DNA of 63,693 nucleotides, filler included, from Reticulomyxa filosa (Eukaryota; Protista; Foraminifera), in assembly GCA_000512085.1 (NCBI GenBank). It is 17 parts of 17 records of this genome, joined end to end, with 100 filler letters (N's around TTAATTAATTAA, not from the genome) between each part and the next. Parts side by side here need not be neighbours in the genome. Positions count along the whole stretch, not along the records: positions 55,048 to 60,806 come from ASPP01008960.1; 16 more parts are not named here. One strand, 5' to 3'. Numbering within the stretch: position 1 is the first letter of the stretch; each line of letters begins with the position of its first letter. The position numbers were made by a program, and so were the translations under genes. Below, one piece after another: positions 54,938 to 60,806 of the stretch. The notes below the pieces were generated by a model. The model was not told where the DNA came from. It saw only the letters and a program-made list of their open reading frames with translations, and ran no database searches.

Positions 54938-55096
54938 TTTTTTTTTTNNNNNNNNNNNNNNNNNNNNNNNNNNNNNNNNNNNNNNNNNNNNTTAATTAAT
55001 TAANNNNNNNNNNNNNNNNNNNNNNNNNNNNNNNNNNNNNNNNNNNNTGTATATATATAAACATAATGAGCCACAAAATTGTTAAAAAAAAAAAGG

Positions 55097-55789
55097 ACTG
55101 GGCTTGTGCCAATTGTGGAGATCCCATACGCCAAGTATCTGGACTGTGGCGCGGAATGTTTTATGAGTCGGTGATAATGAACTGGCTAAGCAATGGAAAC
55201 CAGCCCAATGGGATGCTGATTCGGCTGCAGGGATTTGGGACGGGCTTGTTTGGTGGCAACTTCCACACTCACAACAGCTTAAACTTCCCACCCGGATTGG
55301 ACGTCGTGTGCTACAGCAATGGCAGCGACTATGTGCGCGGCTGGCGATACAATATTCAACAAGCGAAAGGGGGGCGCGTTGTGATGAGCGTCGATTGCAC
55401 GAAACTGCTGAATCAAAGACATGTGTTTGAAGACATGGGATCGCGGGACTCGCTCTTGTTACTCCCACATCCAACGCCGTCTGAATACATCACTCTTGAG
55501 GATGTCATTTTGTATCCTTCGAAACGCTCCTCTCATACCCAATCTGTCGACGAACACTTTGTTGAAAAAGTTATTTGCTCCGATGTCAGCGTTGACAATA
55601 AGACCATTGTCGAAAATCACGCCTCGTATAGCTCAAACGCCGATTTACGTAGCTATTTCAACACGTCGACCAACTCCAAACCCTACGTATGCATTGTCAC
55701 CTATGGAGTCGGGGTTCCTCTGGCAAGACAAGTTTTGACTCTTTTCTTGTTCATTGTATATAGTATTGGATCATATTATATTTATGTAC

Positions 55790-55831
<42 letters not shown>

Positions 55832-56239
55832 TTACATATATACATATATATATGTTTTGCATTCTTTGTTTATTATATGTTGACATGACAACAAAAGGCC
55901 CAGGAAGTGTTATGCAAAAAATATGGCTATGAAAATGTCCTCGTTATCGACACTCCTTGTCTAAGCAAGATTCCAAACAAATTGAAACAGCTGTTTGAAA
56001 GTGTCAAAAATCAAAAGGCGGGGAAATCCGATCCACGCTTTCAAATTATGTTCGCAGATATGTGCAAAGAAATGAACGCTCCGCTGAATAATTTTGCCGT
56101 CAAACTGCAAAATGAAAGCATCTTGCAACACTTTGAATGGAAGAGTGCTGCTGCCTTGCAAACATACAACTTGTTGGGCAAAGAGGTGAGCTTCTTGTCA
56201 AGGGATGAAATTGTAAATACTGTTTTATCCATTAAATGA
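55097..56239 (+). CDS. 2-oxoacid dehydrogenase E1 beta-like / transketolase pyrimidine-binding and C-terminal domains, 5'-truncated, 1-nt frameshift at about 55155
   Basis: GLVPIVEIPYAKYLDCGA then, after the frameshift, MFYE, GGNFHTHN, PPGLDVVCYSNG, IVTYGVGV and VLVIDTPCL. Intron about 55731-55898. Confidence 0.8.
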
Positions 56240-56489
56240 AATACCTTCTCATCTTACATTTTTTAATGCTGACAATTTTTTCCTCCTTTTTTTAATGCAC
56301 CCAGTGCACTATTCTGCTATTATCTACGAGTTTCCTATTTTTGTTGCCTCCTCTCTTTTTTTTATTATTTCTTTTTTTTAAATATTCGACAAGTATTAAC
56401 TGACTCTTTAGAGTTACGTTTGAGGGTTTGTTCCGCCGCTAAAAAAAAAAGAAAACATAAAAAAGTTTTATTTTTCGTGATATATTGTA

Positions 56490-59400
56490 ATGGCAGCGAC
56501 TAATTTTTGTCGATTTTCACTGTCTTTGGCAGTGATTTTGTTGACAGCAGTAACATGGGGCGACAATCTTACCACTCCCTACGCAACGTGGATGACAGAC
56601 ATGAAGAAAAGCAGCTTTTATTATAATGGAAGTATATATTCACTGACAATATTTGATCTAATCTGGCCTGGCTCCCACCATGCTGGTCAATATTCTGTAA
56701 CCACACAGGTGAATAACAACAAAAACTGTGTAAACACACTACGTTTGTTTGCTAAAAATTTGTATACGTAAAATTGACCCACAATCAAAAGAAACCAAAA
56801 AAAAAAAAAAAAAACTTAAAGCTCAAAAAAAAAAAAAATTAAAAAAAAAATAGAGATCAAACGACCAACTTGGGCAATTATGGGTGAACACAACAGCATT
56901 TCCAATAAGCTTTCAAAAGGCGTGGTCGACTAGACAAGAATCAAACATAGCCTATCAGTTGAAAGGCGGTTCGCGATTCTTGGATTTGAGATTTGAATAT
57001 TTGTCATCTCAAGACCAGTTTTACACACATGAAGGTCTATTGGGTGCAGACATTACTTCAGTTATAACTAACTAAAGCAAAGGAATAGCATGAGGGAAAG
57101 AAAAATTTTTTTAAATCATAAGTTCCCTTTCATGTCCCCCTTTTTTTTGTTCTCCTCCCCCCTCCTTCCTCCTAACTTTACTTCAGTGACGACCGAGAAT
57201 GCTCAAGTTTATGTGTTTGTCTATAGATTCTCTCGCAAATTAAGACATTTGTAGAAAACTTGTACACTTCAGGTTTAAAAAAAAAAAAAAATGTGTACGT
57301 GGATGTGTGAATATTAAAAAAAAAAAAAAATAAGCCACAAAAAAAAAAAAAAAAAATTAACCAAAAAAAAAAAAGAAACAGTCCAAGAGGAAATAATTTT
57401 GGTGTCATTGACGAATTTTCTAATGAACGGCAATGCGGGGACGAATACAGCCCGCGTTCACAGATTATTGAATGAGATAGTGAAAGAGTTACGTCCATAT
57501 ATGGCGTCGAGGGCGGTGTTTAGTGAATTGAACGGGGTATCGTTGGAAAGCATCCGCTTGGCGGGGTACAATTTGATATTTTTTACGGACACGTTTTCGG
57601 GATCCGCAAACGACACCTTCTTTTACGATGCCAACACATACTTTGTGAACAACACGGATCTGAAGTTTGAAAACTATACCAGCACGCGAACCCAGGTCAT
57701 TGGCAAGCTGCGCTTCGGCTGGGATTATAAGCAATTCAACCGAATATTCTGGACCACGCCAATCGGAGACTTGTATTCCTTACGTCATATCTATGCGTCG
57801 TATCGAGAGTACAATCTGCCAACAACCCAAGATATCTTTCTTACCTTGCAAACCTACCCGTTTCGTTTTTTTTTTTTTTTTAATATTTGATATTTGAAGT
57901 GATAGAATGGATTATTGCAATTTTTTTTTTTTTTTGCAAATTTAAAAAAAATAGAAAAATTCGTTTCACTAACGCCTTCATAACGGACTACGTCGTTGGA
58001 TCGGGCCTTGTGGAACAAGCGATCTTGTTGAACTACAACTACCTCAACTGTCACGATGTCAATGCCTTCTGGGGAACCAATACAACACAATGTCCGTATA
58101 TAACCGGATTGGAGAGAGATTACCGCAGTGACAATATCGTTTAGTATACATATTGGTACATAAAATATAGAAAGATATAAAGATATAAATATATATTTAT
58201 ATCTTTTTATCTTTATATATTTACGTATACTATTCTAACAATTCAAAAAACAAACAAACTAAAAACAATGGACTTTGTTGTAATTTCATATTTAATTGAT
58301 CGTGTATTGAAAAATATGTGTTTGACACAAAAGAGCTCGCTGTGTGGGACAACTGAAAAAGCAGTCTGCCCACGCTCGTGTGGATTATGCCCTTATGCGA
58401 AAGGTGGCCCCGGCAGCTCGTGTGAATCGAGCAACGATTGCAACAATGCATACTACAGAGCGTATTTGGGCGCGGGTCAAAATGGCACGTGCTTTGTCGC
58501 CACGAAGAAACAGCAGTATTACATCCCGGAAGCGAGCTTTTGCGTATCTGCAAATGCCTTTGAAACGTGCCAGTCCATTAAACAAACGGAATGTGACGAG
58601 TTTCGAGATTATCTGTACGGTAACGGTTCTAACATTACTTGCAACCAATGCACCAGCAACTTTGATTGCTTGTCTTCGTACTGCAGTAGTACTTTGTACA
58701 TTTGCGCTATTGCCACGGAAATCACATTCCGAACCCCTGCCCCGACCACGTCCAACAATCACTATTCCTTTGTTGAATCCACCTGGGCCAGGCAATTCCG
58801 AGACCAAATCGCATGGCTTCGACCTGGAGACGCCAATGGCCAATACTCGTTCGCTTTTAATAACTGGTGCACATCCCAGGCCTCGTGTATTAAACTCCTG
58901 AACAAAAATGTATCATTCATTCCATTTTTGTTTTATGTCATATTTATCAGAGATAAAAATACGTATACTTTTTGTATACATATATGTATATATATATGTG
59001 TATACATTTTTATATGTATACACAATGTGTATATATGTATATTTTTATATACGTCAGTATACATACTTTTTTTGGTGCAAATTTTGCCTAACATGTGTTG
59101 TATTCAAACGAACGAAATAACTCCAATAGCCATATCTAACCTCGTTGATTGGATTTGTATTGATCCCTTTTTCGCTAGCAATTTTGATGTACTTCTTATA
59201 TTCCCTCTGCTGTCTTCCGTGGTGCGTCTGCGATCGATGTCCGAAAAAATGCTGCTGTCGTTCGTGCTTGGGAGACCCCTCCGAATCGGCCTACCGAAAA
59301 CGCGGACCCTTGGTCGCTTTGGGCATTTCATTATGCTTTGTGATATGGGGATGCTCCGAGGGAATTTATGGCAATGGCAAGTTGCACAGCGACTTGTTTG

Positions 59401-60806
59401 GCAAATCGGATTCTTTTCGAAACGTTACCTTCGATATGTTCGACACTTTTATTAACAAATTTGAGGGAATTGGCCCCGTGGCAACCTTTATTTTGTTAAG
59501 CAAGAATTTTGCTTACAACAATACTTTTTTTTTAAAACAAACTAACTATTTTATATATATACATATATATATATAAATATATAAATATATGTGGTGTTGT
59601 GACAAACGTTAGGAACAATTTGGAAACAGTGTTAAATACAGTCGACCGAGTGGTGGCAAATGACGATGTCCACAACGCCACCTATGATGTGATTCACATA
59701 ATGAATAATCTCACGGAGAAGTATGGTCGCAACATTGTGTTTTCGGCGACTATTAATTATCCCTACGACACCAGCAAGCAGATCGAATACAATATTACGT
59801 GCACATATTGCAATGACGTCGGTGACTCCATCCGATCACTGAACGGAACTTTGACTCATACAGTTGGGTGTCATCTTTTTTTGTTTGTTATCAAAGTTAT
59901 CAAACATAGATTAAATAATTTACATATATACATATATATAAATTATTTAGACGCTGACTACTCTCAACTATTTGCAAAAAACATTGAACGGGACTAAGCT
60001 ACTTAGCAATGCTCGGACATTGATCGATGATCAAGTCTCGTCCTATTACCATTCAATGAGTCGTCTGATCAATTCCATCAGCAACGCTTCGCAATCGACT
60101 CGTCGCATTTTGGACAAAGTGGAAGGCTACGATGTCAAAAGGCAAACAGGTGGGTTTGTCTTCTTCACCATTCCGTTTTCGTGGGTGGTGTTCCCCATCT
60201 TGGGAGCCGTGTTATCGAGCAAATGGTTTTTTAAAATGTTACGTATACTTTTTTTTTTAGATAAAAAAGGGACAAAATTGATAAAAATAAAAAAAATAAT
60301 AATAATAATAACAATAATAATAATAAAGAAACTGGTGCCTTGCCATGTATATCGGTGCGACAGTGATGCTGTTATTTTCATTGTTTGCAGTGACATCTGT
60401 CGGCTGGGCTGATTTTTGCGTGCGTTTGGATGACTTTGAAACGGATTTGGGATCGAGTCAATTGGGACAACTCTTGCTGAGTTTGACCCACGGAGGCAAT
60501 GTGTCACTCGGAAATAACAGTTTCACGGGCAACAATTCCAACTTTGGCATGTTCGACATTATCAACGCGTGCTTCACTGGAGAGTCACTCGTCGAAACCT
60601 TCCATTTGGACAAAGGTTTGGACTGGAACTCGCTCCGCAGCAACTTGTCGAGCTCGTTGAACTTTGATGTGAAAAAAGCATTCAAGGTTCAGCAATTGGA
60701 CGAGTTTCGTAACATTATCTCATTCTACATATTTATGTTGCAATCAAACTCTATTTCTAATGCAGTAATGGTATTGTTATTGTTATGTTTGTTTGTTTGT
60801 TTGTTT
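56490..60806 (+). CDS. Multi-exon membrane protein: signal peptide, PI-PLC X-like domain, ShK-like domain, Cys-rich region, Tweety/prominin-like TM module; 3'-truncated
   Basis: Signal peptide MAATNFCRFSLSLAVILLTAVTWG. PLC motifs WM...LIWPGSHHAG, TRQESNIAYQLKGGSRFLDLR and NAFITDYV. ShK is CHD..C..C..CPRSCGLC. TM helices carry GIYGN and ADFC. GT-AG junctions keep frame between the modules. Confidence 0.75.

What the first reader, a model, noticed from the sequence alone, without database searches (positions are those of the whole stretch)
56490..60806. Apparent single gene fusing an extracellular PI-PLC X domain and an ShK domain to a Tweety/prominin-like membrane protein
Seen: plausible GT-AG joins keep frame between modules: TYP|KIRFTNAFITDYV (intron about 57860-57954), RSDNI|SSLCGTTEKAVCPRSCGLC (about 58139-58332) and IKLLNKN|PYLTSLIGFVLIP (about 58910-59129). 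The product would be signal peptide, PLC-X, a 6-Cys ShK-like motif, a Cys-rich linker, TM1, a Cys-rich loop (CCLPWCVCDRCPKKCCCRSC), TM2 ending GIYGN, a long N-glycosylatable ectodomain, TM3 and TM4 ending ADFC. Known: TM2-GN and TM4-DFC are Tweety/prominin-family hallmarks, and these proteins bind lipid and associate with membrane protrusions and vesicles; PLCXD/bacterial-type PI-PLCs cleave PI or GPI anchors. Inference: a surface lipid-remodelling or GPI-shedding enzyme tethered to a membrane-shaping scaffold, possibly relevant to reticulopodia. I do not know this architecture from other organisms.
Basis: partly seen in the sequence, partly recalled or inferred. Interest (0 to 1): 0.8.

Follow-up and report, generated by a model that had tools for sequence, protein, structure and literature searches.

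The report
Foraminiferal PI-PLC-like / prominin-Tweety fusion gene
One ten-exon gene, cut off by the contig end, encodes a surface glycoprotein that joins a phospholipase-C-like outer domain to a prominin/Tweety-type membrane protein; the fusion recurs in several foraminifera and ties this membrane-shaping family to inositol-lipid handling.

Summary
Places 56490-60703 carry ten exons joined by nine GT-AG introns, about 996 codons with no stop. Exon GC is 0.33-0.49 and intron GC 0.13-0.37. The gene is cut inside an intron at the piece's edge.

The same domain order stands in uninterrupted transcript proteins of other foraminifera: Elphidium (1374 aa), Bolivina/Nonionella (1374/1432 aa) and a 1393-aa JGI protein. 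It also stands on two environmental scaffolds and in a Reticulomyxa filosa paralogue split over two contigs. The window's exons map colinearly onto these, and three junctions are seamless.

- **N-terminal domain:** it has the PI-PLC fold by profile, Foldseek and VIA. Its catalytic set is incomplete and not conserved, so a binding role is at least as likely as catalysis.
- **"ShK" motif:** only a half-match, below Pfam's threshold.
- **Membrane part:** it has the Tweety (TTYH) fold, with VIA Z 16.3-17.5 against 11.9 for the next unrelated chain. Pfam Tweety and Prominin matches are repeated and colinear but below threshold. Loop sizes and the cysteine cluster after TM1 look like prominin.

No RNA run was listed, and the joined protein was not built. 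I read it as a new variant of a known kind, seemingly confined to foraminifera.

The parts
56490..56708 (+). Exon 1 (phase 0 end). Signal peptide is about aa 1-24 (56490-56561). The PI-PLC-like domain starts here, and the PGSHHAG motif at 56667-56687 holds the His32 equivalent.
   Evidence: ORF and translation; aligns to the relatives' PG[AS]H motif.
56854..57060 (+). Exon 2, core of the PI-PLC-like domain. The stretch RFLDLR...FYTHEG lies at 56974-57036 and holds the Trp47, Asp67 and Arg69 equivalents, a His at position 81 and a Glu at position 82.
   Evidence: phmmer against PDB: the 21 best hits are all bacterial PI-PLC and align to chain residues 43-85; 40% identity to P0003 30-99 and 74% to the R. 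filosa paralogue.
57227..57272 (+). Exon 3 (46 nt), ILSQIKTFVENLYTS plus one base of a split codon.
   Evidence: Frame bookkeeping; aligns with IITDITDFLTNTGTE of the relatives. The bounds of intron 2 (57061-57226, GC 0.37) are the least certain in the model.
57382..57859 (+). Exon 4, second half of the PI-PLC-like barrel.
   Evidence: Representative search: P0001 at E 1e-36, P0003 at 2.6e-6, P0004 and P0005; colinear with P0003 115-288.
57955..58138 (+). Exon 5, end of the PI-PLC-like domain (FTNAFITDY, the Asp274 equivalent) and the first two Cys of the six-Cys motif, which starts at 58049.
   Evidence: Seamless with exon 4 and exon 6 on P0003 (288|289|290 and 348|349) and on P0001. The family profile aligns its equivalent stretch (rfanvvlvDf) to WLIVDY of S. 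aureus PI-PLC, but that second aligned stretch is itself insignificant (1.5 bits, E about 1e3); exon 5 was placed on the profile stretch by the family alignment.
58334..58909 (+). Exon 6. The C-x7-C-x3-C-x2-C end of the ShK-like motif runs to 58390, followed by a 17-Cys extracellular stalk and a conserved RPGD segment just before TM1.
   Evidence: 34% identity to P0003 349-515 and 61% to the paralogue; no Pfam family on the exon; ShK only sub-threshold in relatives.
59130..59494 (+). Exon 7. TM1 at about 59139-59210, a cytoplasmic Cys cluster at 59208-59267, TM2 at about 59310-59375 with the conserved motif W.C.EGI..N, then the start of extracellular loop 1.
   Evidence: Hydropathy; 47% identity to P0003 546-671, E 4e-38; a Cys cluster at the TM1/IC1 boundary is described for prominin-1 (PMC10967083).
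59613..59862 (+). Exon 8, extracellular loop 1 with four N-glycosylation sequons and the conserved C-x-Y-C motif.
   Evidence: 64% identity to the R. filosa paralogue, 26-28% to P0015 and P0016; alignment.
59951..60237 (+). Exon 9, a long helix leading into TM3 (about 60146-60220).
   Evidence: Pfam Prominin E 0.0012, profile positions 366-437 of 799; P0003 776-860; hydropathy.
60329..60703 (+). Exon 10. TM4 (60330 to about 60413, ending WADFCVRLDDFE), then the start of extracellular loop 2 with four sequons.
   Evidence: 36% identity to P0003 863-967, seamless with exon 9 (860|861|862); 64% identity to the paralogue, whose next exon starts about 120 nt further on.
60704..60806 (+). Start of intron 10 (donor GTTTCG), cut by the end of the piece. 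The rest of loop 2, TM5 and the cytoplasmic tail (about 250 or more residues in relatives) are missing.
   Evidence: Low GC and simple sequence. In the paralogue L004 and in P0016 the protein continues through TM5.

Best explanation
This is one protein-coding gene of a foraminifer: Reticulomyxa filosa itself or a close relative. The nearest database proteins are R. filosa paralogues at 46-74% identity.

The product is a secreted-pathway, N-out, multi-pass glycoprotein. It consists of a signal peptide, a PI-PLC-fold (PLC-like phosphodiesterase TIM-barrel) ectodomain, a six-Cys ShK-like knot with a Cys-rich stalk, and a five-TM membrane domain of the prominin/Tweety (TTYH) superfamily. Four TM helices lie in the piece; the fifth is seen in relatives.

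Shown here: the exon structure, the conservation of the fusion, the two fold assignments and the topology features.

Inferred: the prominin/TTYH-like part offers a lipid-facing extracellular helical scaffold at the cell surface. The tethered PI-PLC-like domain sits above it as a module that recognises inositol-lipid or GPI headgroups. Its catalytic residues are incomplete and vary among orthologues, so the conserved role is more likely binding or presentation of lipid than hydrolysis. The Reticulomyxa copies keep the His32, Arg69 and Asp274 equivalents and might retain some activity.
For: Gene model:
- Ten in-frame GT-AG exons with an exon/intron GC contrast.

Fusion conserved:
- Single ORFs: P0011 Elphidium margaritaceum 1374 aa, P0003/P0007 Bolivina/Nonionella 1374/1432 aa, and P0019 1393 aa on a 4514-bp JGI contig.
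- Colinear exon mapping with contiguous junctions.
- The same order on one strand of the metagenome scaffolds L001 and L002.
- The R. filosa paralogue has the same exon pattern, split across two contigs at intron 6.

PI-PLC fold:
- Family profile against PDB: 13 of 13 hits are bacterial PI-PLCs, best E 0.0014.
- Foldseek: every listed row (ranks 1-50) is a PI-PLC or PLC X domain, probability up to 0.99.
- VIA: all 50 listed entries are PI-PLCs, Z 7.1-9.8 over 130-167 residues.
- Language-model neighbours carry PF00388.

TTYH/prominin fold:
- Pfam Tweety E 3e-6 to 9e-4 in 7 of 9 relatives, always at profile positions about 123-280.
- Colinear Prominin hits.
- Foldseek matches TTYH1-3 with probability 0.90-1.00.
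- VIA Z 16.3-17.5 over 336-356 of about 390 residues, against 11.9 for the next unrelated chain.

Topology:
- All 21 sequons lie in the predicted extracellular parts, none in the short loops.
- There is a Cys cluster after TM1, as in prominin-1.

Functional analogy:
- TTYH has a lipid-filled extracellular pocket (PMC8361169) and speeds lipid transfer with APOE (PMC12328215).
- Prom1 and Ttyh1 both bend membranes and form vesicles (PMC11405016).
Against: - No transcript evidence for this locus: no RNA run was listed.
- Every Pfam match is below its gathering score: PI-PLC-X 11.5 against 23.1 bits, Tweety at most 26.7 against 31.8, Prominin at most 17.5 against 34.3.
- The family profile found no TTYH or prominin chain in PDB by sequence.
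- Both structure models are of orthologues, not of the window's protein, and were built from shallow alignments. The C part has pLDDT 67 and pTM 0.49. The N part has pLDDT 44, with only about residues 64-225 confident.
- Long-helix models give inflated Z-scores.
- The function is inferred purely from domain identity. No lipid, partner or location is known.
Confidence: 0.72

Rival explanations
1. One reading: the ectodomain is an active bacterial/PLCXD-type PI-PLC that cleaves PI or sheds GPI-anchored proteins at the cell surface, anchored by the prominin/Tweety-like scaffold.
For: The window and its R. filosa paralogue keep the His32, Arg69, Asp67, Trp47 and Asp274 equivalents. They also have a His next to the general-acid position, and a His at position 33 that could pair with Glu82. 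The fold is PI-PLC.
Against: The general-acid position His82 is Glu (window), Gln (paralogue and L002) or Asn (the other marine relatives). Asp33 is H, N, K or R, and Asp only in L002, which lacks His32. Arg69 is Q, P or S outside Reticulomyxa. L002 has Ala at His32. A domain conserved across the family without its catalytic set argues for a non-catalytic shared role.
Confidence: 0.22
2. There are two neighbouring genes, a secreted PLC-like Cys-rich protein and a separate prominin-like membrane protein, and the in-frame joins are coincidental or the fused transcripts are assembly chimeras.
For: No RNA evidence for this locus. NCBI annotates the R. filosa paralogue as two partial proteins, RFI_27029 and RFI_03510.
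Against: Those two partial proteins sit at a contig end and a contig start, so the split is an assembly gap. Three independent transcript sources (the MMETSP Elphidium transcriptome, the near-identical Bolivina/Nonionella pair, and P0019 on a JGI contig) give one ORF. Exon 7 has no start codon. The exon 6 tail (the RPGD segment) runs conserved straight into TM1. All nine joins keep frame.
Confidence: 0.03
3. The membrane part is an unrelated five-helix protein that only resembles TTYH/prominin because long helical hairpins are a common arrangement.
For: Every Pfam score is below threshold. The profile search of PDB found no TTYH. TM-scores are low, 0.16-0.39. The Atlas shape search gave nothing. 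Helical models give high background Z (note).
Against: The same Tweety profile segment is hit in 7 of 9 relatives. Separate Prominin hits fall on the matching TM1-TM2 and loop-TM3-TM4 segments. Nine TTYH entries lead the VIA list, about 5 Z-units above the next chain, and cover about 90% of the target. Topology, loop glycosylation and the Cys cluster also match.
Confidence: 0.07

Closest known systems
Tweety homologues TTYH1-3 (Pfam PF04906; structures 7P5J, 7P54, 7P5C, 7RTV)
   Same: Five-TM, N-out membrane protein whose TM helices extend into an extracellular helical domain. Best fold match: VIA Z 16.3-17.5 and Foldseek probability 0.90-1.00. Best, though sub-threshold, Pfam family in relatives. 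There is a conserved acidic residue in TM2 (W.C.EGI). [quoted passage not shown]
   Different: The extracellular loops are much longer, about 200 and 290 aa; the literature gives about 120 aa for TTYH (PMC11405016). There is a ~520-aa N-terminal ectodomain that TTYH lacks. There is a Cys cluster after TM1. Pfam scores are below the gathering threshold, and sequence identity is 8-14%.
Prominin-1/CD133 family (Pfam PF05478)
   Same: Pentaspan topology with two large N-glycosylated extracellular loops and two short cytoplasmic loops. Cluster of cysteines at the TM1/first cytoplasmic loop boundary (PMC10967083). Weak but colinear Prominin profile hits. Prominin-like sequences have been curated from SAR lineages including rhizarians (PMC11405016).
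   Different: Scores are far below threshold (at most 17.5 against 34.3 bits). The near-invariant TM5 tryptophan of prominins is Y, W or F in relatives and cannot be seen in the window. Prominins have only a short N-terminal ectodomain and no enzyme-like domain. No prominin chain appeared among the PDB matches listed.
Bacterial-type PI-PLC and eukaryotic PLCXD proteins (PLC-like phosphodiesterase TIM barrel; Pfam PF00388)
   Same: Fold and motif order: PGxH, W..xQ, RF.D.R, an xHxG-like turn, and a terminal ...D[FY] strand.
   Different: The catalytic set is incomplete and variable (see the membership test). The domain is fused to a membrane protein rather than free or secreted. Pfam gives 11.5 bits against a cut-off of 23.1.
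ShK/ShKT (SXC) six-cysteine domain (Pfam PF01549)
   Same: The final C-x7/8-C-x3-C-x2-C with an RSCG core, and six cysteines in all.
   Different: The C1-C2 and C2-C3 spacings (13 and 20 residues) are far longer than I recall for the 35-37-aa domain (from memory, not checked here). Only profile positions 17-37 match, in 2 of 6 relatives, at most 15.6 bits against 20.9. This region of the model is of low confidence.

Membership tests
PI-PLC X / PLC-like phosphodiesterase superfamily | TIM-barrel PI-PLC fold | tested here: met
   Tested on orthologue P0007:25-590. Every listed Foldseek row (ranks 1-50) and all 50 listed VIA entries are PI-PLCs (Z 7.1-9.8 over 130-167 residues). Only model residues about 64-225 are confident. 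The family profile hits only PI-PLCs in PDB, best E 0.0014.
PI-PLC X / PLC-like phosphodiesterase superfamily | Pfam PF00388 at or above the gathering score | tested here: not met
   Best is 11.5 bits, E 0.24, against a cut-off of 23.1 on P0007. Nothing on the window's exons taken singly. The joined protein was not searched.
PI-PLC X / PLC-like phosphodiesterase superfamily | General-base histidine (His32 of Bacillus PI-PLC) with its partner Asp274 | tested here: met
   Window has PGSHHAG (His63) and FITDY. His32 was assigned by motif resemblance to the PGTHDS of PI-PLC as I recall it, since the printed PDB alignments do not cover it. Asp274 rests on an insignificant second aligned stretch of the profile hit (1.5 bits) plus the family alignment. 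Within the family the His is conserved except in L002, which has Ala.
PI-PLC X / PLC-like phosphodiesterase superfamily | General-acid histidine (His82) with its partner Asp33 | tested here: not met
   By the HMMER alignments, His82 aligns to Glu in the window (with a His one residue earlier), Gln in the paralogue and L002, and Asn in the other marine relatives. Position 33 is H, N, K or R, and Asp only in L002, which lacks His32. A one-residue shift in the alignment cannot be excluded.
PI-PLC X / PLC-like phosphodiesterase superfamily | Phosphate-stabilising Arg69 (or Asp, the Ca2+ ligand, in Ca-dependent enzymes) | tested here: inconclusive
   Arg in the window and its paralogue (RFLDLR); Gln, Pro or Ser in the other relatives.
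ShK domain (PF01549) | Six cysteines with ShK spacing and a profile match at or above the gathering score | tested here: not met
   Six Cys are present but with long C1-C3 spacings. The best score in continuous relatives is 15.6 bits against 20.9, over the second half of the profile only. In the window the motif is split by intron 5, and the joined form was not searched.
Tweety (PF04906) | Profile match at or above the gathering score | tested here: not met
   18.4-26.7 bits against 31.8 in 7 of 9 relatives, all at profile positions about 123-280 of 431. None on the window's single exons.
Tweety (PF04906) | TTYH fold: five TMs with helices extending into an extracellular helical domain | tested here: met
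   Tested on orthologue P0016:40-725. VIA Z 16.3-17.5 over 336-356 residues, with the next unrelated chain at 11.9. Foldseek probability 0.90-1.00.
Prominin (PF05478) | Profile match at or above the gathering score | tested here: not met
   Window exon 9 gives 17.5 bits, E 0.0012, against 34.3. P0010 gives 17.4 bits and P0015 13.6 bits. The hits are colinear with the matching TM segments.
Prominin (PF05478) | Pentaspan, N-out topology with two large glycosylated loops and a Cys cluster at the TM1/IC1 boundary | tested here: met
   TM1-TM4, the cluster of 11 Cys in 20 residues and the sequon distribution are seen in the window. TM5 is seen only in relatives and the paralogue. The prominin features are taken from PMC10967083 and PMC11405016.
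Prominin (PF05478) | Near-invariant tryptophan in TM5 (Trp795 of human Prom1) | not testable with these tools
   TM5 lies beyond the piece. Relatives have Y, W or F at a candidate position (VIA[YWF]), but equivalence was not established.

The most novel reading that the evidence does not exclude
The fusion is a natural 'Rosetta stone'. On this reading the prominin/TTYH-type scaffold lifts outer-leaflet inositol lipids or GPI anchors out of the membrane and hands them to the tethered PI-PLC-like domain for cleavage or capture. That would control membrane composition and curvature of foraminiferal pseudopodia. By extension, free PLCXD-type proteins would be functional partners of prominins and TTYHs in other eukaryotes.
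Probability: 0.15. Interest if true: 0.8.

Novelty: new variant of a known kind. Interest (0 to 1): 0.6.

Why it matters
Prominins and TTYHs are medically prominent: CD133, retinal dystrophy and glioma microtubes. Their molecular job is still debated, and recent work points to lipid binding, lipid transfer and membrane bending (PMC8361169, PMC12328215, PMC11405016).

A conserved natural fusion of this scaffold to a phosphoinositide/GPI-type phospholipase fold gives an independent hint, from domain co-occurrence, about which lipids and partners the superfamily works with. It also gives a concrete protein to test.

For foraminifera it marks a lineage-specific surface glycoprotein family with at least two paralogues in Reticulomyxa. 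The family is currently annotated only as fragmentary hypothetical proteins. I found no paper that mentions prominin or Tweety in foraminifera.

Tried and rejected
- **RNA evidence:** The look-up of sequencing runs listed no run.
- **Pfam exon by exon:** almost blank, with only Prominin on exon 9 at E 0.0012.
- **Exon 4 against PDB:** noise only.
- **Exon 6 homologue search** in its length band: nothing.
- **Representative search:** hits P0002 (a repeat protein) and P0006 (an AAA ATPase) are false positives.
- **C-part family profiles against PDB:** only generic helical bundles, no TTYH.
- **Atlas shape search of the C-part model:** uninformative, TM 0.28 or less.
- **NCBIfam:** nothing.
- **Foldseek rank 1 for the C part** (Umb1 toxin particle, TM 0.17, rmsd 72): set aside as a long-helix artefact. 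It is not among the 50 entries listed by the VIA re-alignment.
- **His33/Glu82 as a swapped Asp33/His82 dyad:** considered, but not adopted, because the R. filosa paralogue has Gln at that place.
- the spliced protein was never joined, typed or searched. All searches used single exons by reference, or database orthologues as proxies. The window's own product therefore has no whole-protein Pfam scan or fold.


Full report
**What is in the sequence**

The piece (55048-60806) is AT-rich eukaryotic DNA with short, very AT-rich introns. From the ATG at 56490 I could chain ten exons on the + strand:

| Exon | Places |
|---|---|
| 1 | 56490-56708 |
| 2 | 56854-57060 |
| 3 | 57227-57272 |
| 4 | 57382-57859 |
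| 5 | 57955-58138 |
| 6 | 58334-58909 |
| 7 | 59130-59494 |
| 8 | 59613-59862 |
| 9 | 59951-60237 |
| 10 | 60329-60703 |

- All nine introns are GT-AG, and most donors are of the form GTT/GTA.
- The frame is kept across every join, including four split codons.
- Exon GC is 0.41-0.49 (the 46-nt exon 3: 0.33); intron GC is 0.13-0.24 (intron 2: 0.37).
- After exon 10 a GTTTCG donor is followed by simple AT-rich sequence up to the piece's edge. The gene is therefore cut inside an intron.

Everything below rests on single exons given by reference, or on database proteins.

**Is it one gene?**

No RNA run was listed for the locus, so the test came from relatives.

- A search of 1.8 billion representatives with exon 4 found only a handful of proteins. 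They include P0003, a 1374-aa protein, and P0001, a partial Reticulomyxa filosa protein (RFI_27029).
- P0003 is from the EukProt Bolivina argentea set and has a near-identical 1432-aa Nonionella stella member, P0007.
- P0011 is a 1374-aa Elphidium margaritaceum (MMETSP1385) protein. P0019 is a 1393-aa protein filling a 4514-bp JGI contig.
- These uninterrupted ORFs carry the same order of modules.
- The window's exons map onto P0003 in order: e1 to 2-20, e2 to 30-99, e4 to 115-288, e5 to 290-343, e6 to 349-515, e7 to 546-671, e9 to 776-860 and e10 to 863-967.
- The e4/e5, e5/e6 and e9/e10 joins are seamless. Exon 3 fits in the multiple alignment, and exon 8 matches other relatives.
- Two metagenome scaffolds, L001 (5922 bp) and L002 (TARA, 9498 bp), have the same order on one strand.
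- In R. filosa a paralogue (46-74% identical) has the same exon pattern. It is broken by an assembly gap in intron 6. Exons 1-6 lie at the end of ASPP01023513.1 (RFI_27029). Exons 7-10 plus loop 2 and TM5 lie at the start of ASPP01003277.1 (RFI_03510).

I regard the single-gene reading as established by homology, though not by transcripts of this locus.

**The N-terminal domain**

- Single exons give no Pfam family.
- Exon 2 alone finds only bacterial PI-PLCs in PDB: the 21 best hits, at E about 0.4-0.9. It aligns to residues 43-85 of the Bacillus enzyme.
- Family profiles sharpen this to E 0.0014, with 13 of 13 hits being PI-PLCs.
- An AlphaFold model of the orthologue P0007:25-590 is poor overall (pLDDT 44), but residues about 64-225 are confident.
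- With that model, every listed Foldseek row (ranks 1-50) and all 50 listed VIA entries are PI-PLCs or PLC X domains (Z 7.1-9.8 over 130-167 residues).
- Language-model neighbours carry PF00388.

The fold assignment is therefore sound. Enzyme status is not, as the residue pattern shows (Bacillus numbering):

| Position | Window | R. filosa paralogue | Other relatives |
|---|---|---|---|
| Trp47, Asp67 | kept | kept | Trp47 kept; Asp67 replaced by Glu (L001) or Gln (L002) |
| His32 | kept (PGSHHAG) | kept | kept, except Ala in L002 |
| Asp33 | His | His | N, K or R; Asp in L002, which lacks His32 |
| Arg69 | Arg | Arg | Q, P or S |
| His82 | Glu, with a His one residue earlier | Gln | Asn; Gln in L002 |
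| Asp274 | kept (FITDY) | kept | kept |

The His32 and Asp274 assignments are weaker than the rest. His32 rests on motif resemblance recalled from memory, because the printed PDB alignments do not cover it. Asp274 rests on an insignificant second aligned stretch of the profile hit (1.5 bits).

A domain that stays 30-50% identical across the family while its catalytic residues drift looks more like a binding module than an obligatory hydrolase. The Reticulomyxa copies may be an exception.

**The "ShK" motif and stalk**

- Six cysteines span the exon 5/6 join and end in CPRSCGLC.
- In continuous relatives, Pfam ShK matches only the second half of its profile. This happens in 2 of 6 sequences, at best 15.6 bits against a cut-off of 20.9.
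- The first spacings are much longer than I recall for a ShK domain (from memory, not checked here).
- I call it ShK-like and no more.
- The remaining 17-Cys exon 6 has no family, and its model is of low confidence.

**The membrane part**

*Topology in the window*

- Hydropathy gives TM1, a 20-residue loop with 11 cysteines, and TM2.
- A loop of about 190 aa follows, with 7 sequons and a conserved C-x-Y-C motif.
- Then come TM3, a very short loop, TM4 and the start of a second sequon-rich loop.
- Relatives add about 290 aa of loop 2, TM5 and a low-complexity tail.

*Sequence-profile evidence*

- Pfam gives a weak Prominin hit on exon 9 (E 0.0012, profile positions 366-437 of 799).
- In 7 of 9 relatives it gives Tweety hits at E 3e-6 to 9e-4, always on profile positions about 123-280.
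- Further Prominin hits fall on the matching TM1-TM2 and loop-TM3-TM4 segments.
- All of these are below the gathering scores.

*Fold evidence*

- A model of P0016:40-725 (pLDDT 67, pTM 0.49) shows the long TM-continuing helices.
- By Foldseek it matches TTYH1-3 with probability 0.90-1.00.
- By VIA-align it matches at Z 16.3-17.5 over 336-356 of about 390 residues. The next unrelated chain is at 11.9.
- Profile searches of PDB by sequence, and the Atlas shape search, gave nothing.

*Comparison with the literature*

- The loop sizes and the cysteine cluster at the TM1/IC1 boundary are prominin traits (PMC10967083).
- TTYH and prominin are regarded as homologous membrane-remodelling proteins (PMC11405016).

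I place the protein in the prominin/TTYH superfamily and in neither Pfam family.

**How it probably works**

Shown: an N-out glycoprotein whose PI-PLC-fold domain and Cys-rich stalk sit outside the cell on a prominin/TTYH-type scaffold.

Inferred: TTYHs hold lipids in an extracellular pocket rising from the outer leaflet and accelerate lipid transfer with a bound carrier (PMC8361169 and PMC12328215). Prom1 and Ttyh1 bend membranes. A tethered domain that recognises inositol-lipid headgroups fits a role in capturing or presenting outer-leaflet PI or GPI lipids. Hydrolysis is possible only where the residues allow.

My rough odds:
- about 0.7 that the architecture and superfamily assignments are right;
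- about 0.2-0.25 that the ectodomain is a true lipase in Reticulomyxa.

**Novelty**

Both halves are of known kinds. I found the fusion only in foraminiferal and environmental sequences, annotated as hypothetical proteins. No paper in the searchable library links prominin with Reticulomyxa, or Tweety with foraminifera. I rate it a new variant of a known kind and moderately interesting.

Noticed in passing
window 55066-56239 (+): An upstream gene on the same strand with two open stretches (55066 to about 55740, and 55907-56239), separated by a (TA)n-rich probable intron. It has no Pfam, NCBIfam or meaningful PDB match. The only hit is a spurious zinc-finger-like one on a low-complexity stretch.
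   Followed up: partly
L003 9974-12109 and L004 101-2475 (R. filosa ASPP01023513.1 and ASPP01003277.1): The partial proteins RFI_27029 and RFI_03510 look like the two halves of one paralogous fusion gene, separated by an assembly gap in intron 6. Both NCBI models read through A-rich or AT-rich introns, giving KKKKKK runs, and RFI_27029 thereby loses the PGSHHAG motif that is present in the DNA.
   Followed up: partly
P0003 and P0007 (EukProt Bolivina argentea and Nonionella stella): The two proteins are nearly identical over more than 1300 residues, although they are assigned to different genera. This suggests cross-contamination or a shared source in those transcriptomes, so I counted them as one independent witness.
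   Followed up: no
window 56673-56678 and 57031-57033; L003 equivalents: The Reticulomyxa copies have His-His where Bacillus PI-PLC has His32-Asp33. They have Glu (window) or Gln (paralogue) where it has His82. In the window this could be a swapped His/carboxylate pair, but that is not supported by the paralogue.
   Followed up: partly
P0003 about 1337-1356, and P0010, P0011, P0013, P0014 tails: The otherwise low-complexity cytoplasmic tails of the marine relatives share short conserved motifs (AES[DE], then Y, then [FY]D, then EPD), possibly a sorting or docking signal. The corresponding part of the window's gene lies beyond the piece.
   Followed up: no
L002 3942-4055: The TARA relative has PGSADPG in place of PGxH, so it lacks even the first catalytic histidine while keeping the rest of the architecture.
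   Followed up: no
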